Shown: piece by piece, positions 6,061-36,164 of the stretch
Layout of the letters: every line of letters starts with the position of its first letter
How positions within the stretch are numbered: position 1 is the stretch's first letter
The notes under the pieces: model-generated
Database searches by the model: none
The model's input: only the letters and a program-made list of their open reading frames with translations
Told to the model about the DNA's origin: nothing
Made by a program: the position numbers and the translations under genes
Assembly (NCBI RefSeq): GCF_001194135.2
Contig: NC_068995.1
Span: 11,432,206-11,468,369 of the forward strand
Origin: Octopus bimaculoides
Lineage: Eukaryota
Length of the DNA stretch: 36,164 nt
Direction: 5' to 3'

Positions 6061-6728
6061 TAGGTGGGGAATGTTGTCCCGCTGACCGCCTCGTCAGCGG
6101 AGTGGCGGGTGTTGTTATCTGAACAATAGTGGACATTGTTAGACGTGACGGTAAGTTGATCGTGGATTGGTCAAGAGATGCGAGGACAAAATCAAACACA
6201 GCGATAACTTATTGTTGATGGATCATTGGATGACTGTCCACGCTGCGATAAGGTGTGACAAAGAAACCCAAATTAATAAGATAAGTAACGGAGAGACAAA
6301 AAGGAAGAGAGGCATGCAAGTGATCGAACAGTGAATCAAATTAGTAAATGTAGAGAGTTGAAGATTACAAAAGACTTGGTTATTTTGTGAGTGGCATCGA
6401 TGTGAGGAACGTGTGAGAGCCAAAAAAGAGTCGTGAACACTGTAGTGTCTGAAGATATTAACATCGGAGAGGTATTTGTCCTCACTACAGGAAGAGATAT
6501 AACGGAAGATTTTGTCAGTAGTTTTAGGAATTCGATGGTCGGTAGACGAATTGGTGGAAGAATTGGTGAAGGAGATTTTGAATCAGCGTAGCAGAAAAAC
6601 CTTTATTTCCCGATAACTGTGTAAATTGTGTAGCTCAGATAACAGAAACCAACAGAAATGAAAGGTTAATTCAGTTTGAATATCAGTGTAGTTTAAAGAG
6701 ATTACGTAGTTAAAGTAATAAAATTTAA

Positions 6729-6962
6729 GGCGGTGAGCTGGCAGAAACGTTAGCACGCCGGGCAAAATGCTTAACGGTGGTTCGTCTGCCGTTACGTTCT
6801 GAGTTCAAATTCCGCCAAGGTCGACTTTGCCTTTCATCCTTTCGGGGTCGATAAATTAAGTACCAGTTACGCACTGGGGTAGATGTAATCGACTTAATCC
6901 CTTTGTCTGTTCTTGTTTGTCCCCTCTGTGTTTAGCCCCTTGTGGGCAATAATGAAATAAGA
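6729..6962 (+). mobile_element. Full-length tRNA-derived SINE (family A, tail type 1)
   Basis: ggcggtgagctggcagaaacgttagc head, gagttcaaattcc B box, core ctttcatcctttcggggtcgataaattaagtaccag, tail tgtttgtcccctctgtgtttagccccttgtgggcaat. Closely similar to the copy at 24178-24410. Confidence 0.9.
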
Positions 6963-7752: not shown

Positions 7753-7943
7753 NNNNNNNNNNNNNNNNNNNNNNNNNNNNNNNNNNNNNNNNNNNNNNNN
7801 NNNNNNNNNNNNNNNNNNNNNNNNNNNNNNNNNNNNNNNNNNNNNNNNNNNNNNNNNNNNNNNNNNNNNNNNNNNNNNNNNNNNNNNNNNNNNNNNNNNN
7901 NNNNNNNNNNNNNNNNNNNNNNNNNNNNNNNNNNNNNNNNNNN

Positions 7944-8779: not shown

Positions 8780-8932
8780 GATTCTTTCTACTAAAGGTAC
8801 AAAGTTTGAAATTTTAGGGGAGGGGACTAGTCGATTATATCGACCCCGGTGTTTCACTGGTACTTAATTTATTGACCCCGAAAGGATAAAAGGCAAAGTC
8901 GTCTTCAGCGGAATTTGAACTCAGAACGTAAA
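8780..8932 (-). mobile_element. SINE family A, 5'-truncated, tail type 2
   Basis: Reverse complement contains the B box gagttcaaattccgc, the core ttttatcctttcggggtcaataaattaagtaccag and the tail aaaatttcaaactttgtacctttagtagaaag, as in 26141-26352. Confidence 0.8.
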
Positions 8933-10011
8933 GAGCTTGATTTTAAGAATTGTGGGTATTTACTTGCTAGCTATCCACAGTGTTTTGTTGTACGTAAAGT
9001 GCAGTTACGACATGTTCAGCTGAATGTATTTACTTTCGTGGTAATTATCCATCTTATATTGTGGGAGTAATCTATTACATCCCAATTTAAGCTTCTAATG
9101 CCGTTTGACTGTGAAGTGAACTTATGTGCAAGATGTGCAATATTTGCTAAGGCCGATAAACGTTTTTCATTTTCTTCTCTGCCGCGTAGGTATTTAGAGC
9201 ATCAGCTCTATACAAGTCATTTTCGAGGTAATTTTTCTCAAGGAGACATTCGGAATTGTATCTATAGTTACATCCATGGAGGAACGCTTGTACATTGCCT
9301 CTTGCTTCTCTATTGTGGTAGAGTAATTGACATTCTATATTGTCTCGACAAGTATAGGTAAATTCTACAGAAATTCTGTGAGAAAAAAAAATTGTGGATT
9401 TTATGGGTACGAAGACGTGCATATCTTCGAAGGTTAATCAAGGTGTAGCTATAATTCTAGCAACAGTCATACAGAAGGGAGGATTTAATGGTTTGGTATC
9501 TTTGCCTTATGGTCTAGTTGTTCAAGTGCAGGTTGGTTCTAGATTGAAACCACTCCCTTTTAATACACTATTATAATATGGAGTAGTCTAGCACATTAGG
9601 CGAGAGTACTCGTACGTTTCCTCTAAACTGCACAGGATAAGAAACCCAAACTGCATGCAACAGAGTGCAGCCTGCGTTCTACCGTATCATCGTGTTGTGA
9701 GTGCATCTTATATATAACGAAATTTTAAGCGTTGCACAATGATGATTAATCGGTTGAGGAAGAAGTAATCCTAAACCGGACCTACACATCGATAAGCTCT
9801 CGTAGTTACTCGCTAGGTGGTATTTCTCTAAGTTTCCACCCAGACATGCGATTCAAAAAAATATTAGATACGCATTCGTTTCCACATAAACTGCAAAGAT
9901 CTTTAAAATATTCTCATGAAACGTAGTAAATAGAAAATGGTATTTTCAGAATTCACTGCATTAACCGAATGCATAAGTCGCAGACAACTATGATTTAAAA
10001 TTAACCATCAC

Positions 10012-10200: not shown

Positions 10201-10484
10201 GTATTGGAGTTTCCAGCGCGAATGCCAAGCAGTACAGCATGTCGTTTCCAAATTCCCAGCAGAGTGAATTGCATCATTGTTTTTTTTCCCCACAAACGGT
10301 ACCCAACCGACGCCACTATGCTGAGTAGTCGACAAAATCAAAAACAAACAATACACATGCGCGAAATCAAAGATATAAAAGGGCAACAATTTACCCATCA
10401 CCCCCTGTCTCTCTCTCTCTCTCTCTNNNNNNNNNNNNNNNNNNNNNNNNNNNNNNTATATATATATATATATATATATGTCTG

Positions 10485-10677
10485 TGTTTGTCCCCCAAAC
10501 ATCGCTTGACAACCGGTGCTGGTGTGTTTACGTACCCGTAACTTAGCGGTTCGGCAAAAGAGACTGATAGAATAAGTACTAGGCTTCCAAAGAATAAGTG
10601 TTGGGGTCGACTTGCTCGACTAAAGGCGGTGCTCCAGCATGGTCACAGTCAAATGACTGAAACAAGTAAAAGAGTAG
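10485..10677 (+). mobile_element. SINE family B, 3' half (follows a TA tract and gap)
   Basis: tttgtccccc..cgcttgacaaccggtgctggtgtgtttacgtacccgtaacttagcggttcggcaaaagag..gataagtact..ggtgctccagcatgg; homologous to 14960-15155 and 28100-28290. Confidence 0.8.
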
Positions 10678-11520: not shown

Positions 11521-12402
11521 CGAAGGGAAAATTTAGCGTGATATTTATTTTGAGCTNNNNNNNNNNNNNNNNNNNNNNNNNNNNNNNNNNNNNNNNNNNN
11601 NNNNNNNNNNNNNNNNNNNNNNNNNNNNNNNNNNNNNNNNNNNNNNNNNNNNNNNNNNNNNNNNNNNNNNNNNNNNNNNNNNNNNNNNNNNNNNNNNNNN
11701 NNNNNNNNNNNNNNNNNNNNNNNNNNNNNNNNNNNNNNNNNNNNNNNNNNNNNNNNNNNNNNNNNNNNNNNNNNNNNNNNNNNNNNNNNNNNNNNNNNNN
11801 NNNNNNNNNNNNNNNNNNNNNNNNNNNNNNNNNNNNNNNNNNNNNNNNNNNNNNNNNNNNNNNNNNNNNNNNNNNNNNNNNNNNNNNNNNNNNNNNNNNN
11901 NNNNNNNNNNNNNNNNNNNNNNNNNNNNNNNNNNNNNNNNNNNNNNNNNNNNNNNNNNNNNNNNNNNNNNNNNNNNNNNNNNNNNNNNNNNNNNNNNNNN
12001 NNNNNNNNNNNNNNNNNNNNNNNNNNNNNNNNNNNNNNNNNNNNNNNNNNNNNNNNNNNNNNNNNNNNNNNNNNNNNNNNNNNNNNNNNNNNNNNNNNNN
12101 NNNNNNNNNNNNNNNNNNNNNNNNNNNNNNNNNNNNNNNNNNNNNNNNNNNNNNNNNNNNNNNNNNNNNNNNNNNNNNNNNNNNNNNNNNNNNNNNNNNN
12201 NNNNNNNNNNNNNNNNNNNNNNNNNNNNNNNNNNNNNNNNNNNNNNNNNNNNNNNNNNNNNNNNNNNNNNNNNNNNNNNNNNNNNNNNNNNNNNNNNNNN
12301 NNNNNNNNNNNNNNNNNNNNNNNNNNNNNNNNNNNNNNNNNNNNNNNNNNNNNNNNNNNNNNNNNNNNNNNNNNNNNNNNNNNNNNNNNNNNNNNNNNNN
12401 NN

Positions 12403-14460: not shown

Positions 14461-14538
14461 CATACGGCAGCTACGAATTCCTGCACCTCCACTAGAGCTA
14501 CTAATAGCATCTAGTAACATCTAATAATGATTTCTACG

Positions 14539-14667
14539 AAATGCTTAGCCGTATTTCATCTGCCGCTACGTTCTGAGTTCAAATTCCGCCGAGGTCGACT
14601 TTGCCTTTCATCCTTTCAGGGACGATAAATTATGTACCAGTTGCGTACTGGGGTCGATCTAATCGAA
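14539..14667 (+). mobile_element. SINE family A fragment
   Basis: aaatgcttagccgtatttcatctgccgctacgttctgagttcaaattccgccgaggtcgactttgcctttcatcc; ends just before a gap. Confidence 0.85.
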
Positions 14668-14911
14668 TGGNNNNNNNNNNNNNNNNNNNNNNNNNNNNNN
14701 NNNNNNNNNNNNNNNNNNNNNNNNNNNNNNNNNNNNNNNNNNNNNNNNNNNNNNNNNNNNNNNNNNNNNNNNNNNNNNNNNNNNNNNNNNNNNNNNNNNN
14801 NNNNNNNNNNNNNNNNNNNNNNNNNNNNNNNNNNNNNNNNNNNNNNNNNNNNNNNNNNNNNNNNNNNNNNNNNNNNNNNNNNNNNNNNNNNNNNNNNNNN
14901 NNNNNNNNNNN

Positions 14912-14947
<36 letters not shown>

Positions 14948-14959
14948 TGTGTTATTGTA

Positions 14960-15155
14960 TCTCTGCCTACCACCACAGTTTGACAACTGATGCTGGTGTG
15001 TTTACGTCCCCTTCACCAAGCCGTTCGGCAAAAGAGACCGAAAGAATAAGTACTGGGCTTTAAAAAATTAATACGCCCTGGGGTCAATTCATTCGACTAA
15101 AACCCTTCATAGCGGTGCCCCATCATGGCTGCAGTCAAACGACTGAAAGAATTAA
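14960..15155 (+). mobile_element. SINE family B, 3' half
   Basis: gtttgacaactgatgctggtgtgtttacgtccc..gttcggcaaaagagaccgaaagaataagtact..gcggtgccccatcatggctgcagtc; homologous to 10485-10677. Confidence 0.8.
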
Positions 15156-19760: not shown

Positions 19761-20882
19761 TATATATATATATATAACAAACGAAAGACAGAAGGTGGAA
19801 TATACGAGAATATATTATTAATCACCACAATTGCTTCGTCACTTCTACCATCGACTCCTCTTGTAGGACACACAAAAATTACTTCAGAAGTATTCTAGGT
19901 ATTATATANNNNNNNNNNNNNNNNNNNNNNNNNNNNNNNNNNNNNNNNNNNNNNNNNNNNNNNNNNNNNNNNNNNNNNNNNNNNNNNNNNNNNNNNNNNN
20001 NNNNNNNNNNNNNNNNNNNNNNNNNNNNNNNNNNNNNNNNNNNNNNNNNNNNNNNNNNNNNNNNNNNNNNNNNNNNNNNNNNNNNNNNNNNNNNNNNNNN
20101 NNNNNNNNNNNNNNNNNNNNNNNNNNNNNNNNNNNNNNNNNNNNNNNNNNNNNNNNNNNNNNNNNNNNNNNNNNNNNNNNNNNNNNNNNNNNNNNNNNNN
20201 NNNNNNNNNNNNNNNNNNNNNNNNNNNNNNNNNNNNNNNNNNNNNNNNNNNNNNNNNNNNNNNNNNNNNNNNNNNNNNNNNNNNNNNNNNNNNNNNNNNN
20301 NNNNNNNNNNNNNNNNNNNNNNNNNNNNNNNNNNNNNNNNNNNNNNNNNNNNNNNNNNNNNNNNNNNNNNNNNNNNNNNNNNNNNNNNNNNNNNNNNNNN
20401 NNNNNNNNNNNNNNNNNNNNNNNNNNNNNNNNNNNNNNNNNNNNNNNNNNNNNNNNNNNNNNNNNNNNNNNNNNNNNNNNNNNNNNNNNNNNNNNNNNNN
20501 NNNNNNNNNNNNNNNNNNNNNNNNNNNNNNNNNNNNNNNNNNNNNNNNNNNNNNNNNNNNNNNNNNNNNNNNNNNNNNNNNNNNNNNNNNNNNNNNNNNN
20601 NNNNNNNNNNNNNNNNNNNNNNNNNNNNNNNNNNNNNNNNNNNNNNNNNNNNNNNNNNNNNNNNNNNNNNNNNNNNNNNNNNNNNNNNNNNNNNNNNNNN
20701 NNNNNNNNNNNNNNNNNNNNNNNNNNNNNNNNNNNNNNNNNNNNNNNNNNNNNNNNNNNNNNNNNNNNNNNNNNNNNNNNNNNNNNNNNNNNNNNNNNNN
20801 NNNNNNNNNNNNNNNNNNNNNNNNNNNNNNNNNNNNNNNNNNNNNNNNNNNNNNNNNNNNNNNNNNNNNNNNNNNNNNNNNN

Positions 20883-21606: not shown

Positions 21607-22232
21607 NNNNNNNNNNNNNNNNNNNNNNNNNNNNNNNNNNNNNNNNNNNNNNNNNNNNNNNNNNNNNNNNNNNNNNNNNNNNNNNNNNNNNNNNNNNNNN
21701 NNNNNNNNNNNNNNNNNNNNNNNNNNNNNNNNNNNNNNNNNNNNNNNNNNNNNNNNNNNNNNNNNNNNNNNNNNNNNNNNNNNNNNNNNNNNNNNNNNNN
21801 NNNNNNNNNNNNNNNNNNNNNNNNNNNNNNNNNNNNNNNNNNNNNNNNNNNNNNNNNNNNNNNNNNNNNNNNNNNNNNNNNNNNNNNNNNNNNNNNNNNN
21901 NNNNNNNNNNNNNNNNNNNNNNNNNNNNNNNNTATGTATGTATGTATGTATGTATGTGTGTATATGCATGCATAAATGCATACGATACATGCAATCAGCA
22001 AGCCATGTATGCGCGCGCACATCAAAATATGTAAGTATGTATGCATGCATGTATCGTCAAATCCATTTAGCACTTCATTCGTATTAATCTTTATTGACAG
22101 ACTATATTTTATCATCCATATTCTTTCACATAAAGGGGTTTAGTGTGGTAGAAACCATATCCATATATTTCTTTTATATCTTTACAAATCTATATCTCGT
22201 GAATCTGCGATAGTCTTTGTTTCACACAAAGT

Positions 22233-24001: not shown

Positions 24002-24177
24002 GTACTTTTACAAAAAGAACTCCCCAATTCATGATCTTCCAAGCCTCAAGATAAGAAAATTCGATCTCATAGCGTCTACGAGTTCCAGCCGACTTATACA
24101 CTTCGATGAGGTTCCATTGAACCAGCACAACCTCAAAGATCCGTGTCAGTCTACTAAGGAATTAGCCCAGCACATAA

Positions 24178-24410
24178 GGCGGTGAGCTGGCAGAAACGTT
24201 AGCACACCGGGCGAAATGCTCAGCGGTATTTCGTCTGCCGTTACGTTCTGAGTTCAAATTCCGCCGAGGTCGACTTTGCTTTTCATCCTTTCGGCGTCGA
24301 TAAATTAAGTATTAGTTACGCACTGGGGTCGATGTAATCAACTTAATTCCTTTGTCTGTCCTTGTTTGTCCCCTCTATGTTTAGCCCCTTGTGGGCAATA
24401 AAGAAATAAG
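24178..24410 (+). mobile_element. Full-length SINE family A (tail type 1)
   Basis: Same head, core and tail as 6729-6962, with few substitutions. Confidence 0.9.
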
Positions 24411-24454
24411 ATGTGATGCAATCATGACACATCCCTCCGGCACCTTCATTCGAT

Positions 24455-24837
24455 GGGTAAGGTCCAAACTGTCCGACCAGTAACACACGACAACACTTAC
24501 CCCTCACCACCATCACTGTGTCGCTAATTTTACCAAAAATGCCATTCCAGTGCTCAGTCGGGAAGTTGTATCGCAACCACAGAACACTACCGACATACAG
24601 CCTTCAGATTATCACCTTTTTCGGCCCCTCTCCTACAGTTTGCGAGTCGTGGACTGAAAATTTGGCCCGATCAATTCTCTGAGTGCAGACTCGGTAATTT
24701 CTCTCGTCAAGTCATTCACAAACTTGAGGAAAGTTGGCAAGAAGTGAACAATGGAAGAGAATATATTATTTAATGGTTTGCTAAAATTATTGTTGAAATA
24801 TAAATATAGACAAACGAGTTAATCTGACATCCCAATA
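24455..24837 (+). mobile_element. Decayed mariner (DD34D-type) transposase 3' end with right terminal repeat
   Basis: HDN..(frameshift)..HCVANFTKNAIPVLSREVVSQPQNTTDIQPSDYHLFRPL resembles HDNARPH..WEVLPHPPYSPDLAPSDYHLFRSL. IHKLEESWQEVNNGREYII* resembles GIxKLPERWQKVIxxNGxYI. Ends in a TIR-like aaacgagttaatctgacatcccaata. Confidence 0.8.
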
Positions 24838-25335: not shown

Positions 25336-26140
25336 ATACTTAGAAACATTTACGCACGCAAATATATATGTATATATATATATNNNNNNNNNNNNNNNNN
25401 NNNNNNNNNNNNNNNNNNNNNNNNNNNNNNNNNNNNNNNNNNNNNNNNNNNNNNNNNNNNNNNNNNNNNNNNNNNNNNNNNNNNNNNNNNNNNNNNNNNN
25501 NNNNNNNNNNNNNNNNNNNNNNNNNNNNNNNNNNNNNNNNNNNNNNNNNNNNNNNNNNNNNNNNNNNNNNNNNNNNNNNNNNNNNNNNNNNNNNNNNNNN
25601 NNNNNNNNNNNNNNNNNNNNNNNNNNNNNNNNNNNNNNNNNNNNNNNNNNNNNNNNNNNNNNNNNNNNNNNNNNNNNNNNNNNNNNNNNNNNNNNNNNNN
25701 NNNNNNNNNNNNNNNNNNNNNNNNNNNNNNNNNNNNNNNNNNNNNNNNNNNNNNNNNNNNNNNNNNNNNNNNNNNNNNNNNNNNNNNNNNNNNNNNNNNN
25801 NNNNNNNNNNNNNNNNNNNNNNNNNNNNNNNNNNNNNNNNNNNNNNNNNNNNNNNNNNNNNNNNNNNNNNNNNNNNNNNNNNNNNNNNNNNNNNNNNNNN
25901 NNNNNNNNNNNNNNNNNNNNNNNNNNNNCTCATGAGACCTTTTGTTTCGCTTGCAATAATTATTTACTTATGGAGAGCGCTCAGCCGATCATTCAAAATG
26001 AGTCCGGATTATGAGTAAATTGGCTGAAATAAATGACTGAACGCTGGATTACAAACACACGGTGTAGTGATTTTCAATAATCTTTTTTTTTTTACCTATA
26101 GATCATTTTGGTTCCTATTTTAAGCGAGTTGACCCTATAA

Positions 26141-26352
26141 GGCGGTGAGCTGGCAGAATAGTTAGCACGCCGGGCGAAATGCTTAGCAGTATTTCGCCCG
26201 ACTTCACGTTCTGGTTCAAATTCCGCTGAGGCCGACTTTGTCTTTCATCTTTTCGGGGTCGATAAATTAAGTACCAGTGAAACTCTGGGGTTCGATGTAA
26301 TCGACCAGTCCGTTCCCCTAAAATTTCAGGCCCTGTACCTTTAGTAGACAGG
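26141..26352 (+). mobile_element. SINE family A (tail type 2) with a 20-bp target-site duplication
   Basis: Head and core as in 6729. Flanks attttaagcgagttgaccct (26117-26136) and attttaatcgagttgaccct (26353-26372) match at 19/20. Confidence 0.85.
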
Positions 26353-26476
26353 ATTTTAATCGAGTTGACCCTCATATCAATCCAATGTCTTAAAAATTCG
26401 ATTATATATTTATAAGCGAATATTGTGTAAAATTGAATTGTGTTAAATTTGTGAAAATACTTTTTGTATTGTAAAA

Positions 26477-26588
26477 GTAGAACTAATTTCTTTCACATAA
26501 GTTTTAACCACAAAATCTTATATGTATCCCCAAAAAGGGTCAATATATGATTTTTGTTGTTAAAACTAATGTGAAATAAATGTTCTAG
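26477..26588. repeat. AT-rich imperfect foldback (inverted repeat, short loop)
   Basis: tttcacataagttttaaccacaaaatcttatat (26491-26523) pairs with atatatgatttttgttgttaaaactaatgtgaaa (26543-26576) with 3 mismatches and 1 bulge; a tagaac/gttcta pair extends the stem. Confidence 0.8.
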
Positions 26589-26954
26589 GATACCTAAATC
26601 TACTTTTGAGGCTGTGTCCCATTATACCTTGTTATAAAAAACAATTTATGACGAGGGATTGAATCTTGAGCGACTGAAACAAAGAAGCGTGGCAATGCTA
26701 CCTCTCTATATTACACATTTCAAGCAGGACTACAGAAACATGTGTCTGTCCTAACAAACCTAAATAGTGCTAGAATAATTTTGTTTTGCACAACTTAATT
26801 CAAATTTTGTATTACACACGCATATATACATACATACATACATACAAACAAACATACATACAAATATACATACATACAAACATACATACATACATGCAAC
26901 TCTTGCATGATTAACAAGAGATGTGTCTATTGATGTTCTCCTTCACTTGCACCA

Positions 26955-27035
26955 TGGGATAAATCAATTACATCAGAATTTGAACTCAGAACTATTAACT
27001 GACGAAATTCCTCTAAACATTTTGTCCGACGTGCA
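26955..27035 (-). mobile_element. SINE family A fragment (head and B box)
   Basis: cagaatttgaactcagaac..gacgaaattcctctaaacattttgtccgacgtgc is the diverged reverse complement of the head. Confidence 0.6.
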
Positions 27036-27176
27036 ACTAGACCCACAGAGCGAAATCAATATCTCATGTGCTCTTGCTGTGTTAGTTTAATTGTATACGA
27101 TGCAGAATCTTGGGTACTCTCTATAAGGTTACCAAACATATTCGATTGTTGTTACAAAGGACTTCTGTCTACGTAG

Positions 27177-27256
27177 GGTACAAACTCTTTTGGGGGAAAA
27201 CCCATTCCTCATTAAGACAAATTTACCATTTATTTTGCATAAGCTGAAACAACGTG
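27177..27256 (+). CDS. Candidate internal exon (R)VQTLLGENPFLIKTNLPFILHKLKQR, phase 2 to 1
   Basis: Acceptor cttctgtctacgtAG and strong donor GTG|GTAAGC. Only one of three frames is open over the 80 nt, and phases fit 24001 upstream and 34003 downstream. Confidence 0.45.
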
Positions 27257-27454
27257 GTAAGCAATTTTCTGGGCACTGATTTAGGACCAAAGATAGTCTC
27301 TGGGCCTCTCGATCAACTGGTAGTAACAACAACATGATTCCGTATCTCGATGTCATCCCTAAAATCTTGTAAAAGATAGGCTATATGGTGCATTAAAGTA
27401 GGATTATGTGCTCAAGGACCAAGTATTTTTAGATCTTTTATCTTTAACTTGTCT

Positions 27455-27845
27455 CACTCATAAGACTGCGACCAAGCTGCAGCACCGCCTTGAAGTATTT
27501 AGTCGAACAAGTCGACACACTTATACTTATTCATGTAAATCTGGATTTATTCTATCCTTCTCTTTTATTGAAATTCTATTACAAGGCTTAAACAAACCGA
27601 CGCCGGTTGTCAAGCGGTGATAGAGTCAAAGAGTTACATACATACACATGCACACACAAACACTCGCATATACACAGACACATTTATATACGACACGCAT
27701 CCACACAGTTTCCGCATATCAAATCCACTCACAAGGCATTAGTCGGCCCGGGGCTATAGTAAAACTCATTCGCCAAAAGTAGGTTTGAACTCGCAATCGC
27801 AGGGTTATAAAGCGAGTTTCTTACACACACAACCATGCTAGCACC
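27455..27845 (-). mobile_element. SINE family B, near full length, with internal microsatellite
   Basis: Reverse of the 3' half (cagcaccgcc..tagtcgaacaagtcgac..cgccggttgtcaagcg), a (CA/TA) spacer, then reverse of the head (aaatccactcacaaggc..gtcggcccggggctatag..). Confidence 0.7.
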
Positions 27846-27954
27846 TGTAAATCTATGTGTATATTGTTTATATTTATTGTTATGTACAGTATTTACACAA
27901 ATATTTTCATATAAAGTTGCAGTTGCGGCTCTGTTGTAAGAAATTTGCTTCGTA

Positions 27955-28290
27955 ACAGCATATGTCTCGGTTAAGTCCCATTGCATAGCACCTTGGGCAA
28001 ATGTTTTCTTCCAAAGTGCTTTGAGAGGATTTGGTAAACGGAAACTGAAAGAAGCACGTCACATATGTGCGTGTGTGTGTGTGTGTCTTTATGTCTGTTT
28101 GAACGGTGTAGATGTGTTTACGTTCCTGTAACATAACAGTTCAGCAAAAGACACTGATAGAGCAAGTACGAGGCTTGAAGACATAAATAAGTAATGGGGT
28201 AGATTCGCAATACGAACATTCTCCAAAGCGCCTTCCCCCACGCAGCATGGCTGCAATCTAAGGAATGAAACATGTAAAACGTAGAAAATA
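27955..28290 (+). mobile_element. SINE family B with internal (TG)n microsatellite
   Basis: ggttaagtcccattgcatagcaccttgggcaaatg..ggatttggtaaacggaaactgaaagaagc, then (TG)n, then gtgtttacgttcctgtaac..gttcagcaaaagacactgatag..cagcatggctgca. Confidence 0.75.
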
Positions 28291-28670
28291 AACGTTAAAA
28301 GGACACACAATATGGCAAGGGTGCTTGACACCTGAGTTCTGATGCCACTTTGTGTCTTTAGCGCTTAAACAAAAAGGAAGTCTCCCAGGGCCTATTCCTT
28401 TCCAGATCTGATCTAGAACCTTCTACTATGTGACCACATACTTTTATCAAGAAACCTATTTATACATATGAATTCACTCCCCCACACATACGTACGTACC
28501 TACATGAATACGCATGCATCTACAACAAATCACATCTACCTAAGTACGTGAGTACATACAAACACACACACACATACATGCACATATATATATATATATA
28601 TGCATATACACACATATGTATATGTACAAACATACATATGTATATCTAAATAAATAAATACATACATATA

Positions 28671-28722
<52 letters not shown>

Positions 28723-28875
28723 TATGTTCGCGTATACACGCACACGTACACTTCATCAAGACAAGATGTCCTTAAACGACACTTTTACTTAGGTTCGAAA
28801 TATGAAGCTTATAAGCTTTTACAGTTTTTAACCACACACACACACATACCTCTCTCCTTCTTTCTCTTTCACTCC

Positions 28876-28915
<40 letters not shown>

Positions 28916-29735
28916 CCCTCTTTCTGCTGCCCTTTTCTTTCTCTCTTCTCTCACTCCCACCACCACTTGTATAAAACATCTTGTAAAATAGTATTGAGCC
29001 GTTTCAAGTACCAAATTATTTCTCGCATGTAAGAAATAAATATTACGTATCTATAATCTCCAGCGCTTCGTACAATGTTCTAAATATTACTACACGAGGT
29101 TACTTAGATACATATATATACATAGATACACATATATATATATATACACAGAGAGAGAGCTGCAAGATTTAGATATTTTAGTTTATTTATTTATATTTTT
29201 TTTTGTCTTTCTTTCTCTGGTTTTTTTTTTTTTTTTGGTAGGTATCATTTCTTTAACGCTTCTTATGTTGCAATCTTGCAATCTTCATTAAATTTGATGA
29301 AGAATATGCCGTTTTAAAATTGCATATACATATTATCTGCACAGGAATCTTCCGTATAGATCACATGCTTCAGCCTCTTCTGCAACTCATTTATTTCTTT
29401 GAATATATTTTGCAGTCTTCATATTTACATTAAATACCAAAAATCAATTACCATTTCTTCAAATATAGCACGCAGTAGTTTCGATTGGAAACGTCGAAGA
29501 ACTTTACAACGAAACACTTGTGTTTCTTTTCCAATAAAGAACAAGTGGGTTCGGTCTTAGTAACAGTAAGAACGTGGTTGCTGATTAAGATGTGTCTTAT
29601 TTGCTTTTATTTCTAGATTTCAAGTCAATAGCGAAAGATCCGGTTTCTAGCCTAGATCCAAGGCTTCTTCATTGGAATTTCTACGTCAATCACATAATTG
29701 TGCATATATAAATATATATTTATGTGTATAGTTGT

Positions 29736-29880
29736 AGGCATGGGTATGTGGTAAGAAGCTTGATTCCCGTCCACATGGTTCCGGGTTCAGTCCCACTCTG
29801 TGGTATATTGGGCAAGCCTCGGTCCGACCAAATACTTGAGAGTGGATTTGGTAGATGGAAACTGAAATGAGCCCGTCGTA

Positions 29881-29882
<2 letters not shown>
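29736..29882 (+). mobile_element. SINE family B head, followed by (TATC)n and (CATA)n
   Basis: aggcatgggtatgtggtaagaagctt..ggttccgggttcagtcccact..ttgggcaag..gagtggatttggtagatggaaactgaa..cccgtcgtata. Confidence 0.8.
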
Positions 29883-29924
<42 letters not shown>

Positions 29925-30020
29925 AATCTATCTATTTATCTATCTATCTATCTAACTATACACACACACATGCATACATACATACATACATACATACAGA
30001 CAGACATACATACATAAATA
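29880..30020. repeat. Compound (TATC)n-(CA)n-(CATA)n microsatellite
   Basis: Direct reading. Confidence 0.9.
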
Positions 30021-30186
30021 AGCGCAGGAGTAGCTGTGTGGTAAATAGCTTGCTTACCAACCACATGATTCTGGGTTCATTCCCACTGCGTGGCACTTTG
30101 TGCAAGTGTCTTCTACTATAGCCTCGGGCCGATCAAAGCTTTGTGAGTGGATTTCATAGACAGAAACTGGAAGAAGCCCGTCGTAT
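30021..30186 (+). mobile_element. SINE family B head, running into a gap
   Basis: gcgcaggagtagctgtgtggtaaatagcttgcttaccaaccacatgattctgggttcattcccactgcgtggcactttgtgcaagtg..cagaaactggaagaagcccgtcgtat. Confidence 0.85.
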
Positions 30187-31471
30187 NNNNNNNNNNNNNN
30201 NNNNNNNNNNNNNNNNNNNNNNNNNNNNNNNNNNNNNNNNNNNNNNNNNNNNNNNNNNNNNNNNNNNNNNNNNNNNNNNNNNNNNNNNNNNNNNNNNNNN
30301 NNNNNNNNNNNNNNNNNNNNNNNNNNNNNNNNNNNNNNNNNNNNNNNNNNNNNNNNNNNNNNNNNNNNNNNNNNNNNNNNNNNNNNNNNNNNNNNNNNNN
30401 NNNNNNNNNNNNNNNNNNNNNNNNNNNNNNNNNNNNNNNNNNNNNNNNNNNNNNNNNNNNNNNNNNNNNNNNNNNNNNNNNNNNNNNNNNNNNNNNNNNN
30501 NNNNNNNNNNNNNNNNNNNNNNNNNNNNNNNNNNNNNNNNNNNNNNNNNNNNNNNNNNNNNNNNNNNNNNNNNNNNNNNNNNNNNNNNNNNNNNNNNNNN
30601 NNNNNNNNNNNNNNNNNNNNNNNNNNNNNNNNNNNNNNNNNNNNNNNNNNNNNNNNNNNNNNNNNNNNNNNNNNNNNNNNNNNNNNNNNNNNNNNNNNNN
30701 NNNNNNNNNNNNNNNNNNNNNNNNNNNNNNNNNNNNNNNNNNNNNNNNNNNNNNNNNNNNNNNNNNNNNNNNNNNNNNNNNNNNNNNNNNNNNNNNNNNN
30801 NNNNNNNNNNNNNNNNNNNNNNNNNNNNNNNNNNNNNNNNNNNNNNNNNNNNNNNNNNNNNNNNNNNNNNNNNNNNNNNNNNNNNNNNNNNNNNNNNNNN
30901 NNNNNNNNNNNNNNNNNNNNNNNNNNNNNNNNNNNNNNNNNNNNNNNNNNNNNNNNNNNNNNNNNNNNNNNNNNNNNNNNNNNNNNNNNNNNNNNNNNNN
31001 NNNNNNNNTATATATATATATATATTTATACACATATGCACATACAGATATCAGTGTATCTTTGCTATTGTTCCTGTTCTTCTATCTTCATTTATAACGT
31101 TATATATCCTGGGCTGGTCATTACAGCTATATATTACACTTTCGACATAAGCTCTAATTATTCTGATGTATAGTATTTTCTTCCGCATGTGCATTCGCTT
31201 AGCAAGAGAACGTTGTAATTAAAGTGATGTACACGTTTCCGGGAGATAGAAGAAATCTATAATCAGACTGAGATTTAGGGTGTGTACATCCAACGCGCAT
31301 TGATATGCAATCAAATGCGCAATTTTCTTACACGTGTGAACATGTAAGTGCATATGACAGCAAATATCTGGTTTCTTTTTTTTTATACTGATACGCACAT
31401 GCATACATAGATACAAAGATACATAGACACGTACATGCATATGCACATATATACATACATACATACATACA

Positions 31472-31505
<34 letters not shown>

Positions 31506-32112
31506 CTTATATTTATACACACACGTACACATGCACATGTATATATATGCATAAACATATGTTAAATACTTATATATGTATGAATATATATATAGAGAGA
31601 TACACCCACATGTACGTATATAGTTATATATACATACATATGTANNNNNNNNNNNNNNNNNNNNNNNNNNNNNNNNNNNNNNNNNNNNNNNNNNNNNNNN
31701 NNNNNNNNNNNNNNNNNNNNNNNNNNNNNNNNNNNNNNNNNNNNNNNNNNNNNNNNNNNNNNNNNNNNNNNNNNNNNNNNNNNNNNNNNNNNNNNNNNNN
31801 NNNNNNNNNNNNNNNNNNNNNNNNNNNNNNNNNNNNNNNNNNNNNNNNNNNNNNNNNNNNNNNNNNNNNNNNNNNNNNNNNNNNNNNNNNNNNNNNNNNN
31901 NNNNNNNNNNNNNNNNNNNNNNNNNNNNNNNNNNNNNNNNNNNNNNNNNNNNNNNNNNNNNNNNNNNNNNNNNNNNNNNNNNNNNNNNNNNNNNNNNNNN
32001 NNNNNNNNNNNNNNNNNNNTATATATATATATACATATATATATGAATGAATATATGTATAAATATATATGTATATACATATGCCTACACACACACACCT
32101 ACACACATGCCT

Positions 32113-32144
<32 letters not shown>

Positions 32145-32633
32145 TCACATATGTACATATGTGGGTGGGTGTTACGTATGTGCGTCTATTTACGTGAATG
32201 CGCGTGTGTGCATGTATATGTGTTTGTATATAATAGGAAGGTAAACGAGCATGCGCAAGATATTTGCAAAGCTCGAGTTTTCGTATCGTTGCTATTGATG
32301 TACAGTATGTTCACCTTGAATTACCGAAGGTTTAATGCCTGTTGTACAAAACTTTAACAAGCGCAAGTGAATTCCATTGGGCTACAGTTCCGTAAAGCAA
32401 TGATAGCGAATAGTGTTTAATTGTAGGGTTTGAGAAAGTAAGACAAAGTAAGAATATAGAGCACAGGGTAAGGCTGGGGTGAGAAGGAATCTCGATAATT
32501 TGTATGGGAAGATGGTGTTGCATTAGCAGAAACATAGGCAGATGGATGAACCCCCATGTGTGTGTTGTAGTTGTACTGTATTAATGAAAGAATTTTGCCA
32601 ATCGTACATTCTTTGTGGATGCGGTGTCCATGA

Positions 32634-33065
32634 GTTAGGATCAGGGCAGCGGCACTGCGCGAGCACGGAAGTGACAGTTGCCTTGAGAATACATCAATGT
32701 CCCTGCAACAACATCACAACAACATCTGCAAAAATAAGAAGACAACGAAAGCAGTGGTTGCTGCTGCTGCTGGCGGGCATGGTGGCGCTGTCTCTGGTGT
32801 TAGGTCACCACTGCAAAGTCGAAATTGTGGAAGCGTCATCACTGGCAACAATAGGTATCGGTCATCTCTGGCTAAGACGCCGGCTCGAGCCAACATCAAT
32901 TCTACTGGTGGAACGGGTGTTAAAACCGTTTCTAAGCCTCTTTTCAATTGGGGTCTTGAATCTAGCGAGCACGGCAGCGGCACAACGAGATCACGGCAGC
33001 GGCACAACGAGATCACGGCAACGGCACAACATCAGTTTTGTGCGCAGTGCTCTAGATCATTGTAA
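32634..33065 (+). CDS. Low-complexity G/S/A/N-rich open frame of unknown status (exon, pseudo-exon or gene fragment)
   Basis: Open from 32634, ATG at 32697. Codons are RNY-biased (gtt gct gct ggc, aat tct act ggt) and GC is well above the flanks. No clear polypyrimidine acceptor and no recognisable domain. Confidence 0.3.
   Translation, partial: VRIRAAALREHGSDSCLENTSMSLQQHHNNICKNKKTTKAVVAAAAGGHGGAVSGVRSPLQSRNCGSVITGNNRYRSSLAKTPARANINSTGGTGVKTVSKPLFNWGLESSEHGSGTTRSRQRHNEITATAQHQFCAQCSRSL
32970..33030. repeat. 22-bp tandem repeat, about 2.8 copies (cacggcagcggcacaacgagat)
   Basis: Units at 32970-32991, 32992-33013 and 33014-33030 (partial, one substitution). Confidence 0.95.
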
Positions 33066-33158
33066 AATATCAACAGATGATTACGTATGCAGTTATTTGT
33101 TGCCCTTAAAATGTCTAATTTTTCGAATAAACTTTTAAGAACACTGTTTAGAGTCCTT

Positions 33159-33306
33159 AGCACGAAGTGTCGAATGTTTAGTGGGATTTCGTCTGTCTTT
33201 ACGTTTTGGGTTCAAATTCCACCGAGGTCAACCATGCCTTTCGACCTTTCCAGGTCGATAACATAAGTACCATTTGAGCACTGGGGTAGAGGTAATCTGT
33301 TAGTCC
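33159..33306 (+). mobile_element. Diverged SINE family A
   Basis: gatttcgtctgtctttacgttttgggttcaaattccaccgaggtcaac..gcctttcgacctttccaggtcgataac..aagtacca. Confidence 0.75.
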
Positions 33307-33313
33307 TTCTCAT

Positions 33314-33470
33314 AGGCGCAGGCGTGGGTGTGTAGTAACAAGCTTCCTTCCCCACCACAGGGTTCAGGTTTCAATCCCGCTGCGTGGAACCTTAGTCAAA
33401 CGCACTCCACTATATATTCGGGCCGACCAGTACCTTGTGAGAACACTTGATAGACAGAAACTGAAAAGGA
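33314..33470 (+). mobile_element. SINE family B head
   Basis: aggcgcaggcgtgggtgtgtagtaacaagctt..ggttcaggtttcaatcccgctgcgtggaaccttag..gggccgacc..ccttgtgag..gacagaaactgaaa. Confidence 0.75.
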
Positions 33471-34002
33471 ACAGACAGTTCAGTTAATATGTATTGTATA
33501 GTAAAGTTTTAGAATGAGGTGAAGTACATGTGTTTGTAGTACACACACACATACACACACACACACACATGTATACACACACGATGGCCTTTCAAAAGTT
33601 GCCATCTGGCAAATTATACTCGCTTGCGAGTGACGGGTAAACCTACCAAAGCAGCTAATGTAGTTGATGCTATGGTAACTCTTTCGAGTAGGACTGACTC
33701 CGTCAGTGGGTATTGTATCAAGCACGGAGTCGGATCACTACACATTTCGTTTAGTAGTTCCAGTGTTCATGCTTCCACGCGTCGACACTTGTGAATAGAT
33801 GCGATGCTGAAGACATAAAAGCATACGAAATTAAACTGTAATTAACATTACTTCAAATTAAAACCAACCAATCTTTCAGTTCTGAACATGCCTAATATGT
33901 GTAATAAATTAACAATTTTTTTAAATATTATATTATATTATATTATATTATATTATATTATTTCATCCATAATTTTCTTGGATATTTCATTATTTGTTAC
34001 AG

Positions 34003-34124
34003 CTGTAGCATGCGCCTGGCTATACTCCAATATACCATATGGCATAGGATGGGAGGACGACTCGAATCACATGAACGATACAATGCAAATAGCCAACAGG
34101 GGAATATGGAATTATTGCAAATTC
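34003..34124 (+). CDS. Candidate exon (A)VACAWLYSNIPYGIGWEDDSNHMNDTMQIANRGIWNYCKF, phase 1 to 0, or terminal exon reading to TGA at 34134-34136
   Basis: Good acceptor ttcattatttgttacAG and phase fits 27256. The only phase-0 donor (TTC|GTTTCG) is weak. Confidence 0.3.
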
Positions 34125-34394
34125 GTTTCGGCCTGAAGGCAGAAATTAACATTATTAGAACTACCAAAAGGATTCCTCTACACCATATTACTGTACAGCA
34201 CACACTACGCAACATATAATGAAATATCTTAAAGCTTAGGGGCTCAATATTTTGCGAAATTAAGGACTGGTGAAGTAGTAGAAAGTGTAGATCATTACAT
34301 GGATTAAATGTATAACAACCTGAGTGAATGAAGGTACGACTAGAAAGTCGGCTCTTCTGCTAGAAATGGCAGTTAAATTTTATTTAAATCAAAT

Positions 34395-34599
34395 CATACA
34401 ACTGTTGAGTTAAAAATGGGAAAACACTTTTAGTAAGATAGTAAAGTAATAAAGCAATAGATAAATAAATTGATATAAAACAATAAAGGTAAATGAATAA
34501 TTAAAATAAAAGACTGGATTGCCACAACTGGAACGTCTTTTATCATAGGCTTCAGCTCGAAGTGTGCTGACCTGGAGTAATAAACAACAGCAGCAAAAT
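34395..34599 (+). repeat. Left arm of a perfect 205-bp inverted repeat (family D SINE-like 3' portion)
   Basis: Checked block by block: identical to the reverse complement of 35842-36046 at all 205 positions. Repeat-like sequence continues upstream (about 34340-34394) only on this arm. Confidence 0.97.
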
Positions 34600-35152
34600 G
34601 AAGAAGAACAGGAAGAACGACAACTCTACTCCATCGACAGCAACGAAAGCGCCAGAGGGTGCTGATCTCAGCGACGGGAGGGAACCGTTACATTGACGTC
34701 TGACATACTAGAAAAAACAGTTAAACTGTCAAAGTTTTGTCATTTCTAAATCACAAGCTACTTGATAATACAGTCACATTGGATAATGTAGTCTAGAAAA
34801 CAAAATAGACATGTCGCTCGTGGACGAAAATCCTTCAATAGAAGCTTGCACGACCAAGATTGATCTGGGGATAAAGACGGAGGAGAATGATAATGTGGAG
34901 AAGCAGGAGGAGGAAAAGGAGAAGGGTTAGAGGATGGAAGGAGGGCGATGGAAGGCACACGGAAAGGGGAAGAACACCATAAAAAGGATTAACATGTATG
35001 GCAGTGATTAGTTTCGATCCACTCGGTTCTGCACCAAAGTTCTTCTGAGGCTAAGATGCTAAATTTGTTTTTCGTTCCCTCGGAAGTCGATTAAATGGTT
35101 GATAAACATATTTATATGTTATCAACCATCTGTAATCACAGCTTCTCAGTCC

Positions 35153-35185
<33 letters not shown>

Positions 35186-35274
35186 CTATATATCTTAGGG
35201 TTCCTGTACTAATTAAAGAAATAAACACATTACGTAACGTTAAAAAACTATCTTGCTTTTGCTTTATCGCTCAG

Positions 35275-35469
35275 CCAGAAGCGGAAGACAGCAACCTTGA
35301 ACCTTACCGGAAGCTCCAAGACTGGAGAACTGGGCTGAATGTTTGCAGCAGAATGAACTTTGCCAATGTCACCAAGGGACCAGATGACAATGTTAAAGCG
35401 ATTAACGGATTAAGTTTACTGCGGAAATACAGTGAAGTCGTAGTGGAAGCAGTAGAGAAAGAATCTAAA
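35275..35469 (+). CDS. Candidate internal exon of 65 aa (PEAEDSNLEPYRKLQDWRTGLNVCSRMNFANVTKGPDDNVKAINGLSLLRKYSEVVVEAVEKESK), unknown protein
   Basis: Acceptor tatcttgcttttgctttatcgctcAG and donor AAA|GTATAT. 195 nt, phase 0-0, only this frame is open, with protein-like composition against AT-rich flanks. Confidence 0.6.
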
Positions 35470-35841
35470 GTATATTACTCTATATAATTTTGATCCTCTA
35501 TATTCCGATTTCAACATCAAGTTGCAGGGGGGATTTAACATTTCATTATTTTCAAGTGTTATGTTGGGCTCACGTCGGTCTCGTTCCATCACGCTTCTGT
35601 GCCTTCATGTACAGGCCTAGGAAAGATTTTTTGTTTTTGTTTGAAGTCATTCATGCATGCGAGGCTCTTCTCCCCACGCCACTCATGTTTATCTAAAAGA
35701 AAAGTTGCCAACCTGAAGCGATATAGATTGTTTTCCTTCCCGAGTCATATAGACAAGCAGGGGCAAGTTTCTCAGATTTCCATGGCATATATATATTCCC
35801 CTCGTGGACGTGATGTCGCTCCGTCACTGGATTACCCATAT

Positions 35842-36046
35842 ATTTTGCTGCTGTTGTTTATTACTCCAGGTCAGCACACTTCGAGCTGAAGCCTATGATA
35901 AAAGACGTTCCAGTTGTGGCAATCCAGTCTTTTATTTTAATTATTCATTTACCTTTATTGTTTTATATCAATTTATTTATCTATTGCTTTATTACTTTAC
36001 TATCTTACTAAAAGTGTTTTCCCATTTTTAACTCAACAGTTGTATG
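35842..36046 (-). repeat. Right arm of the perfect 205-bp inverted repeat
   Basis: Exact reverse complement of 34395-34599, with abrupt ends on both sides. Confidence 0.97.
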
Positions 36047-36164
36047 TAAAAACAAATAGTAAATGAGTACATGCATATATACGTACAGGTATGTGCATAC
36101 CGACATCCACCTGTATGTATAGGTGCATATCTGGGTACAGGACATTGCAAACAAAACAGAGACG

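What the first reader, a model, noticed from the sequence alone, without database searches (positions are those of the whole stretch)
34395..36046. Perfect 205-bp inverted repeat bracketing the best exon candidate
Seen: 34395-34599 and 35842-36046 are exact reverse complements (205/205) around a 1,242-bp spacer holding the symmetric phase 0-0 exon 35275-35469. Every other repeat pair in the window has diverged. Only the left arm continues into more repeat-like sequence, so the right arm looks like a local copy rather than an independent insertion. Established: intronic inverted repeats form long dsRNA that is edited by ADAR and promotes back-splicing or exon skipping, and coleoid cephalopods edit RNA very extensively. 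Inference: this is either a very recent inverted duplication or inversion scar, a pair homogenised by gene conversion, or an assembly artefact. If real, it would be a strong switch for skipping, circularisation or editing of this exon.
Basis: partly seen in the sequence, partly recalled or inferred. Interest (0 to 1): 0.7.

Follow-up and report, generated by a model that had tools for sequence, protein, structure and literature searches.

The report
Perfect 205-bp inverted repeat, non-coding
Two exact 205-base copies in opposite orientation do bracket 1.2 kb of DNA here, but nothing shows that the enclosed "exon" is real, so this is most likely an ordinary young rearrangement or transposon-like unit of a kind already known to be common in octopus genomes.

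Summary
Positions 34395-34599 and 35842-36046 are 205/205 reverse complements with a 1,242-bp spacer. This is the only perfect repeat pair in the window; all others are 74-93% identical. The pair lies in a gap-free stretch of a gap-rich draft scaffold. The arm edges are sharp, with no residual similarity beyond them. There is no target-site duplication of 3 bp or more, only a palindromic TA embedded in the arms. The arms contain no internal sub-repeats, no frame shows a transposase remnant, and the window holds no other copy. The "best exon" (35275-35469) has no credible protein relative in word-indexed, exhaustive or Pfam searches. The window contains 64 similar AG..GT open segments, so the exon-switch reading is unsupported. 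No gene was found in the adjacent 8 kb, so intronic status is unproven. If one RNA spans both arms, they would form a perfect 205-bp duplex (-345 kcal/mol), a textbook ADAR hyper-editing substrate. Such loci are already reported as unusually abundant in octopus. The origin is unresolved between a one-off local inverted duplication or micro-inversion scar (my preference), a non-autonomous long-TIR DNA transposon, and, less likely, an assembly artefact. None of the collections available holds this organism's DNA or reads, so copy number, read support and orthologous loci could not be tested. Interest is low.

The parts
34395..34599 (+). Left arm of the inverted repeat. It is 205 bp and 30% G+C. 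The outer ~125 bp are very AT-rich and the inner ~80 bp are of normal complexity.
   Evidence: Searches give the coordinates and identity. One search gives the sequence and shows no internal direct repeats beyond chance.
35842..36046 (-). Right arm, the exact reverse complement of the left arm (205/205).
34600..35841 (.). Spacer of 1,242 bp. It is unique in the window and not palindromic. No frame shows a protein-family signal. It contains a purine-rich tract (about 34820-34990), a (TC)15 microsatellite (35156-35185) and a small imperfect hairpin (35088-35137).
   Evidence: Pfam on six frames: nothing; no homologue; tandem repeats; alignment of the spacer against its own reverse complement.
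35275..35469 (+). It has a good polypyrimidine tract and cag acceptor, and a weak-to-moderate AAA|gtatat donor. It is not supported as coding.
   Evidence: for the sequence and frame. Searches found no credible homologue. One search counted 64 similar open AG..GT segments in the window.
34397..34398 (.). TA dinucleotide two bases inside the left arm. With 36043-36044 it would be the target-site duplication if the unit is a Tc1/mariner-type element running 34399-36042 (TA|CAACTG...CAGTTG|TA).
   Evidence: The TA is palindromic and lies inside the repeat, so it carries no information by itself.
36043..36044 (.). Matching TA dinucleotide two bases inside the right arm.

Best explanation
This is a genuine, evolutionarily young inverted duplication of a 205-bp single-copy segment in non-coding DNA, produced by a one-off local rearrangement. 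One route is a micro-inversion of the ~1.2-kb spacer with a staggered break at one breakpoint, where fill-in leaves one copy of the staggered stretch at each end in opposite orientation. The other is the insertion of an inverted copy by template switching or end joining. It most likely has no selected function. Its only predictable consequence is conditional: any transcript that spans both arms, on either strand, would fold into a perfect 205-bp stem with a 1.24-kb loop and would be promiscuously deaminated by ADAR. The enclosed 'exon' is probably just an open stretch of non-coding sequence. What is shown: the repeat, its sharp edges, its uniqueness in the window, the lack of coding signal, and the in-silico duplex. 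What is inferred: that the repeat is real in the animal, how it arose, whether it is transcribed, and whether it is edited.
For: The match is 205/205 with exact edges. There is no residual similarity of the inner or outer flanks beyond the arms. That fits a single recent copy event and argues against an old repeat. Zero differences in 205 bp puts pairwise divergence below 1.5% at 95% confidence, whereas the interspersed repeats in the window differ by 7-26%. Neither the arm nor the spacer has another copy, full or partial, in 36 kb. Transposon hallmarks are missing. No TSD of 3 bp or more exists at any boundary shift from 0 to 7. No frame contains a transposase or any other Pfam domain. The arms hold no paired binding-site repeats or sub-repeats. 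The arms lie in a gap-free 4.1-kb stretch, with the nearest gap ending at 32019. The arm duplex is -345.3 kcal/mol, and all 205 arm-arm pairs appear in the minimum-free-energy fold of the whole 1,652-nt unit on both strands. Octopus is reported to have an exceptionally high fraction of loci able to form long, nearly perfect dsRNA (4.4e-3) and the strongest hyper-editing signal (PMC5625713).
Against: There is no microhomology at either junction of the right arm (read), which template-switch models usually predict. The overall shape, two perfect terminal inverted repeats around a 1.2-kb core with TA|CA...TG|TA ends, is also exactly what a non-autonomous cut-and-paste element looks like. Genome-wide copy number, the key discriminator, could not be measured, because no collection available holds this organism's DNA. 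The control shows this: the window's own high-copy SINE core has 0 hits. The sequence comes from a gap-rich short-read-style draft (10 gaps, 13% N), so read-level confirmation is missing, and collapse of near-identical copies could exaggerate the perfect identity.
Confidence: 0.4

Rival explanations
1. The 1,652-bp unit (or 34399-36042) is a non-autonomous class II DNA transposon with ~200-bp terminal inverted repeats. It would be inserted at a TA and mobilised in trans by a Tc1/mariner-type, or other, transposase encoded elsewhere in the genome.
For: The unit has perfect terminal inverted repeats with sharp ends around a non-palindromic core about 1.2 kb long. Its ends read TA|CAACTG...CAGTTG|TA, matching the TA target and 5'-CA termini typical of Tc1/mariner. 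Long inverted repeats of 200-460 bp are known in Tc1-family elements such as Minos, Tc3, Paris and Sleeping Beauty (my own knowledge, not tested here). A motif-level resemblance to a mariner transposase C-terminus elsewhere in the window (about 24484-24770) would be consistent with this superfamily occurring in the genome, but Pfam did not confirm it.
Against: No frame contains a transposase remnant or any Pfam domain, and no protein homologue was found. The arms contain no paired direct repeats. The TA is palindromic and lies inside the repeat, so it would be present under any model, and this reading also needs two further flanking bases to be complementary by chance (1/16). The window holds no other copy, even a diverged or partial one. 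A recent transposition does not by itself explain why the two ends are identical over all 205 bp.
Confidence: 0.3
2. The repeat is an assembly artefact. Either only one arm exists, or the two arms belong to different loci, or their true sequences differ and were collapsed to one consensus by a short-read assembler or gap closer.
For: The window is a draft scaffold with 10 N-gaps totalling 4,718 N, most of them next to TA/TG microsatellites. A perfect 205-bp repeat is longer than typical short reads. The arm sequence, and the orientation of the spacer between the arms, therefore rest on read pairs alone. Both spacer orientations share the same four junction sequences (my inference).
Against: The arms are not next to a gap; the nearest one ends at 32019, 2.4 kb away. 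Both ends of a single unique 1,242-bp spacer abut an arm, so two arm copies in opposite orientation are required unless two independent chimeric junctions were invented. The known hairpin-type artefacts have no long unique spacer (my own knowledge).
Confidence: 0.12
3. The arms are two independent insertions, in opposite orientation, of a very young ~205-bp interspersed repeat such as a SINE, a MITE or a retroposed fragment.
For: In left-arm orientation the arm ends in AATAAA followed by CAACAGCAGCAAAA, loosely like a retroposed 3' end. Interspersed SINE-like repeats are frequent in the window.
Against: Neither arm has its own target-site duplication. No other copy exists in the window, although the known SINE occurs at least six times. 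Two independent copies with 0/205 differences would require an extremely young family. ARAGORN and Rfam find no tRNA-like head.
Confidence: 0.08
4. The inverted repeat is old and its arms are kept identical by gene conversion.
For: Perfect identity is what conversion produces, and 205 bp is near the minimal length for efficient homologous recombination in animals (my own knowledge).
Against: Conversion tracts rarely coincide with the original duplication edges, yet no diverged homology is detectable just outside any of the four arm edges.
Confidence: 0.05
5. The repeat sits in introns flanking a real cassette exon (35275-35469) and acts as a switch for skipping, back-splicing or editing.
For: The geometry is suitable. 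The arms lie 675 bp upstream of the acceptor and 372 bp downstream of the donor, and they pair perfectly. The acceptor has a good pyrimidine tract. Flanking inverted repeats are an established driver of back-splicing (my own knowledge).
Against: The 65-aa peptide has no homologue. The four exhaustive-search hits (E of 2e-6 to 1e-5) are unrelated tandem-repeat proteins, a known artefact of summing scores across repeats. Pfam finds nothing. The window holds 64 equally open AG..GT segments. No exon or gene was found within 8 kb upstream. The donor lacks the consensus G at -1 and at +5.
Confidence: 0.04

Closest known systems
Nearby inverted repeat pairs that form long dsRNA and are hyper-edited by ADAR (Alu pairs in primates; abundant near-perfect dsRNA loci in Octopus bimaculoides, PMC5625713)
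   Same: Two inverted copies lie within 1-2 kb of each other and can pair intramolecularly into a long duplex. Here all 205 bp pair, at -345 kcal/mol.
   Different: Those pairs are normally two diverged copies of a high-copy transposon. Here the arms are identical and have no other copy in the window. Transcription and editing at this locus are not shown.
Long-TIR Tc1/mariner elements (Minos, Tc3, Paris, Sleeping Beauty IR/DR group) and their non-autonomous derivatives
   Same: Total length is about 1.6-1.8 kb. The terminal inverted repeats are about 200 bp. TA dinucleotides flank 5'-CA...TG-3' ends.
   Different: There is no transposase or remnant and no paired direct repeats within the arms. 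The TA is uninformative because it is palindromic, and no second copy was seen.
Inverted duplications flanking inversions made by staggered breaks (the model proposed for Drosophila inversion breakpoints; my own knowledge)
   Same: A formerly single-copy stretch is present once at each end of a segment, in opposite orientation, with blunt junctions and no TSD.
   Different: The segment here is only 1.2 kb, and the ancestral orientation is unknown because no outgroup sequence was available.
Drosophila hairpin-RNA (hpRNA) loci that yield endo-siRNAs
   Same: A long perfect inverted repeat with a loop can form a hairpin transcript.
   Different: A survey of molluscs found no evidence of a dedicated endo-siRNA pathway and suggests that editing, rather than dicing, deals with long dsRNA (PMC12479628).

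Membership tests
Class II DNA transposon, Tc1/mariner long-TIR (IR/DR) type | Terminal inverted repeats | tested here: met
   The arms are 205/205 complementary.
Class II DNA transposon, Tc1/mariner long-TIR (IR/DR) type | TA target-site duplication directly flanking the element ends | tested here: inconclusive
   TA occurs at 34397-8 and 36043-4. It is palindromic and lies inside the repeat, so it would be there under any model. This reading also needs two more chance-complementary bases.
Class II DNA transposon, Tc1/mariner long-TIR (IR/DR) type | DDE transposase gene or recognisable remnant (autonomous copies) | tested here: not met
   Six-frame Pfam search at E<=1 returned only a sub-threshold chance hit to an unrelated family, RD3 (E 0.085, 13 bits against a cut-off of 27). 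The six-frame homology search found nothing. A non-autonomous copy would be allowed to lack a transposase.
Class II DNA transposon, Tc1/mariner long-TIR (IR/DR) type | Paired direct repeats (transposase binding sites) inside each inverted repeat | tested here: not met
   The arm has no repeats of 12-16 nt at up to 3 mismatches. The single exact 9-mer repeat is within chance.
Class II DNA transposon, Tc1/mariner long-TIR (IR/DR) type | Multiple dispersed copies in the genome | not testable with these tools
   The 36-kb window has no other copy. No collection available holds this organism's DNA; the control SINE core has 0 hits.
hAT, Mutator-like, PIF, piggyBac and other TIR superfamilies | Non-palindromic TSD of 3-11 bp, or TTAA | tested here: not met
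   No direct repeat of 3 bp or more flanks the unit at boundary shifts 0-7. The best adjacent 11-mers match only 9/11 in AT-rich sequence, by my reading.
Foldback elements | Inverted repeats built from tandem sub-repeats | tested here: not met
   TRF finds no array in the arms, and there are no internal repeats.
ADAR hyper-editing substrate (long intramolecular dsRNA) | Near-perfect duplex of ~100 bp or more between sequences a few kb apart | tested here: met
   The duplex is 205 bp at -345.3 kcal/mol and forms in the whole-unit fold on both strands.
ADAR hyper-editing substrate (long intramolecular dsRNA) | Both arms transcribed in one RNA, with clustered A-to-G mismatches in RNA-seq | not testable with these tools
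   No RNA-seq or annotation for this locus is available. No gene was found nearby.
Inverted-repeat-driven circular RNA or cassette exon | A real spliced exon between the complementary sequences | tested here: inconclusive
   An open frame and plausible splice sites exist. However, no credible homologue was found, Pfam finds nothing, and the window holds 64 similar segments. A lineage-specific or non-coding exon cannot be excluded.
Inversion scar with staggered-break duplication | Inverted copies of otherwise single-copy sequence at both ends of the segment, with no TSD | tested here: met
   Single-copy status was checked within the window only.
Inversion scar with staggered-break duplication | An outgroup shows one copy and the opposite spacer orientation | not testable with these tools
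   No related genome could be reached.
Assembly artefact | The repeat abuts a scaffold gap or contig end | tested here: not met
   The nearest gap is 31645-32019, and 32020-36164 is gap-free.
Assembly artefact | Lack of spanning reads, or abnormal read depth | not testable with these tools
   No reads are available.

The most novel reading that the evidence does not exclude
The repeat was born recently in this lineage around a real but unannotated, lineage-specific exon. It acts as a species-specific hairpin that couples ADAR hyper-editing to skipping or circularisation of that exon, which would be a newly evolved RNA-level switch caught at its origin.
Probability: 0.04. Interest if true: 0.45.

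Novelty: new member of a known kind. Interest (0 to 1): 0.15.

Why it matters
As it stands, it matters little. Close inverted repeats that can form long dsRNA are already reported as exceptionally common in octopus and as the main source of its hyper-editing signal (PMC5625713). This locus would be one more example, unusual only for its perfect identity. It has modest practical value. It is a clean test case for telling a one-off inverted duplication or micro-inversion scar from a young long-TIR transposon family. It also warns that the spacer orientation, and therefore the strand of anything annotated inside it, cannot be fixed by reads shorter than the arm. It would become interesting only if RNA data showed a real exon with back-splicing or skipping that depends on the arms.

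Tried and rejected
- **Reaching related DNA through proteins.**
  - The exon peptide, a six-frame concatenation of 34000-36164 and a six-frame concatenation of 25929-34000 gave no homologue.
  - Four window ORFs are not on record as gene products.
  - No orthologous or independent assembly of the locus could therefore be fetched.
- **Exhaustive phmmer of the exon peptide.** It returned four hits at E of 2e-6 to 1e-5. I rejected them after reading the sequences: all are unrelated proteins made of long tandem repeats, where summed weak matches inflate the score.
- **Exact-pattern scans with the arm.**
  - JGI metagenomes and GTDB prokaryote genomes gave 0 hits.
  - The metagenome negative carries no information, because the window's own high-copy SINE core also has 0 hits there.
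  - The GTDB negative, and blastn against plasmids, only rule out bacterial or vector contamination.
- **Rfam.** Nothing reached gathering thresholds. The sub-threshold 'miRNA' matches all lie in TG/TA microsatellites outside the arms. I rejected them as chance.
- **A larger degraded palindrome.** I suspected one because the AT skew changes sign mid-spacer. Aligning the spacer against its own reverse complement gave only a 50-bp local hairpin, so I rejected the idea.
- **Homology between the arm or spacer start and the GC-rich tract at about 32700.** I suspected this by eye. Smith-Waterman alignment of the upstream contig against the element did not recover it; its best match was an AT-rich low-complexity stretch only slightly above the shuffle range. 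I rejected it.
- **An 11-bp TSD.** TTAAATCAAAT and TAAAAACAAAT match 9/11 by my reading. I rejected it as a chance match in AT-rich flanks, and two mismatches in the TSD would not fit arms that have none.
- **Bacterial promoter and terminator scan.** The counts are at the shuffle expectation, and the scan is irrelevant to a eukaryote.

Full report
**Observation**

The repeat finder and two self-blastn runs agree. Positions 34395-34599 and 35842-36046 are exact reverse complements, 205/205, separated by 1,242 bp. By chance such a pair is expected about 1e-109 times in this window.

The window is a draft scaffold with ten N-gaps totalling 4,718 N, mostly next to TA/TG microsatellites. The repeat lies in the last gap-free stretch, 32020-36164. 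All other non-trivial repeat pairs in the window, mainly a SINE-like family present at least six times, are 74-93% identical.

No part of 33800-34394 matches anything else in the window. A Smith-Waterman alignment of the element against the upstream contig (32020-34394) found only AT-rich low-complexity similarity, score 23 against a shuffle maximum of 19.5. The left arm does not continue into more repeat-like sequence.

**Anatomy**

- **Arms.** Each arm is 30% G+C. The outer ~125 bp are AT-rich and the inner ~80 bp are of normal complexity. The arms contain no tandem sub-repeats and no internal direct repeats beyond chance.
- **Edges.** Identity falls from 100% to noise at all four edges. Neither the inner nor the outer flanks of the two arms align with each other (scores 9 and 7.5).
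- **Spacer.** The spacer is not a degraded palindrome. Aligned against its own reverse complement, it shows only a ~50-bp local hairpin at 35088-35137.
- **Target-site duplication.** No direct repeat of 3 bp or more flanks the unit, even when the boundaries are moved inward by up to 7 bases. The only candidate is a TA at 34397-8 and 36043-4, which would give the ends TA|CAACTG...CAGTTG|TA. A palindromic dinucleotide inside an inverted repeat is present on both sides by construction, so it proves nothing.
- **Junctions.** Read from the junction sequences, neither junction of the right arm shows microhomology.

**Coding content**

Six-frame translation of the 1,652-bp unit matches no Pfam family; the only line is a 13-bit chance hit.

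It has a good pyrimidine tract and cag acceptor, and an AAA|gtatat donor. Several searches failed to support it as coding:

- The peptide shares no words with any of 5.8 billion protein clusters.
- A six-frame concatenation of 34000-36164 gave no hit at E<=1e-3.
- The exhaustive HMMER scan of 1.84 billion representatives gave four hits at E of 2e-6 to 1e-5. All four are unrelated proteins made of long tandem repeats. That is a score-summing artefact, not homology.
- The window contains 64 AG..GT-bounded open segments of at least 195 nt, so an open segment of this size is unremarkable.
- A six-frame search of the preceding 8 kb (25929-34000) found nothing either.

Neither the exon nor the assumption that the repeat is intronic has any support. 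A lineage-specific or non-coding exon cannot be excluded. Rfam finds nothing at gathering thresholds. Its sub-threshold matches lie in microsatellites outside the arms.

**Related sequences**

I could not reach any other DNA of this organism.

- Four window ORFs are not on record as gene products.
- An arm 30-mer has no exact match in the JGI metagenome contigs. A conserved core of the window's own high-copy SINE has none either. That collection therefore holds no DNA of this organism, and the arm negative says nothing about copy number.
- The absence of matches in GTDB prokaryote genomes and in plasmids only argues against contamination.

Genome-wide copy number, read support and orthologous loci, which are the decisive data, remain untested.

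**What it most likely is**

Zero differences in 205 bp bounds the divergence of the arms below about 1.5% at 95% confidence. The window's interspersed repeats differ by 7-26%. The repeat is therefore young, but 'young' could still mean up to a few million years.

*Gene conversion.* The sharp edges argue against an old repeat homogenised by conversion.

*Assembly artefact.* Two observations argue against a simple artefact. The arms are 2.4 kb from the nearest gap. Both ends of one unique spacer abut an arm, so two chimeric junctions would have to be invented independently. Two caveats remain, both my inference:
- A short-read assembler can collapse near-identical copies to one consensus.
- The two possible spacer orientations share the same four junction sequences, so orientation rests on read pairs alone.

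*Two ordinary origins remain.*

1. **A one-off local rearrangement.** One route is a micro-inversion with a staggered break, whose fill-in leaves one copy at each end. The other is the insertion of an inverted copy. This fits the uniqueness of the arms and spacer in the window, the missing TSD, the blunt junctions, and the absence of any transposon hallmark.
2. **A non-autonomous long-TIR DNA transposon.** This fits the overall shape and the TA|CA...TG|TA ends. It lacks a transposase remnant, binding-site repeats and any second copy.

I prefer the first at 0.4, against 0.3 for the transposon. I give the artefact 0.12, two independent insertions of a young repeat 0.08, and gene conversion 0.05.

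**How it would work**

Shown in silico: the arms form a perfect 205-bp duplex of -345.3 kcal/mol, and all 205 pairs appear in the minimum-free-energy fold of the whole unit on either strand.

From the literature:
- Long, nearly perfect intramolecular dsRNA made by nearby inverted repeats is the main substrate of ADAR hyper-editing.
- Octopus bimaculoides has both an exceptionally high fraction of loci able to form such structures (4.4e-3) and the strongest hyper-editing signal among the species compared (PMC5625713; see also PMC9989829).
- Molluscs show no evidence of a dedicated endo-siRNA pathway, so dicing into siRNAs is a less likely fate than editing (PMC12479628).

Inferred: if one transcript covers both arms, it will be heavily edited. 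Any effect on splicing or circularisation further requires that 35275-35469 be a real exon, for which there is no evidence. The most likely 'function' is none; this looks like a neutral structural feature.

**Comparison and novelty**

The locus works like the well-known class of nearby inverted repeats that give long dsRNA. In shape it resembles both a long-TIR Tc1/mariner derivative and an inversion-breakpoint duplication. The tested membership features for a transposon are mostly not met (transposase, internal repeats, a TSD of 3 bp or more, a second copy in the window) or are uninformative (TA). Its membership of the 'dsRNA-forming inverted repeat' class is met at the sequence level only.

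It is a new member of a known and abundant kind, notable only for perfect identity. I did not verify the organism.

**Verdict**

Interest is low (0.15).

Noticed in passing
window 6725-6962, 14517-14666, 24174-24411, 26137-26305, 33150-33297 (+); 8787-8934 (-): A SINE-like interspersed repeat family occurs at least six times in the window, with copies 74-93% identical to each other. ARAGORN and Rfam detect no tRNA-like head in any copy.
   Followed up: partly
window 814-1181, 7753-7943, 10427-10456, 11557-12402, 14671-14911, 19909-20882, 21607-21932, 25384-25928, 30187-31008, 31645-32019: There are ten N-gaps totalling 4,718 N (13% of the window), of variable estimated size. Most are bordered by TA, TG or CT microsatellites, which is the signature of a short-read draft scaffold.
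   Followed up: partly
window ~24484-24770 (+), two frames: Translated fragments such as 'DIQPSDYHLFRPL' and 'HKLEESWQEVNNGREYII' resemble, from memory, the C-terminal end of mariner-type transposases. Pfam did not confirm this on the separate fragments at E<=0.1, so it remains an unverified lead.
   Followed up: partly
window 32527-33135: A G+C-rich island (about 52%, against 30-40% in the surrounding sequence) carries three overlapping long ORFs (a 203-codon open frame with a 198-aa ORF from its first ATG, plus 122- and 100-aa ORFs). It also holds a 22-bp tandem unit CACGGCAGCGGCACAACGAGAT repeated about 2.7 times at 32970-33029. There is no Pfam domain, no homologue, and no record as a gene product.
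   Followed up: partly
window 35088-35137: A small imperfect palindrome lies inside the spacer (ATGGTTGATAAACATAT / ATATGTTATCAACCAT). It is about 107 bp off the centre of the unit, and its meaning is unknown.
   Followed up: no
window 10457-10586 / 14922-15060 / 28104-28176; 30018-30169 / 33312-33463; 27706-27764 (-): Additional diverged interspersed repeat families (74-84% identical) sit next to microsatellites and gaps. They may be further parts of the SINE-like element.
   Followed up: no
window 32028-32237, 33521-33578, 36041-36128: Sub-threshold Rfam 'miRNA' matches (mir-297, mir-3149, mir-466 and others, 20-46 bits against gathering scores of 49-101) fall entirely in TG/CA/TA microsatellites. 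They are chance matches to low-complexity models.
   Followed up: yes
window 34020-35020 versus 35020-36120: The AT skew on the + strand is positive (A-rich) through the left flank, the left arm and the left half of the spacer. It is negative through the right half of the spacer and the right arm. The sign change near 35020 has no matching sequence symmetry.
   Followed up: partly
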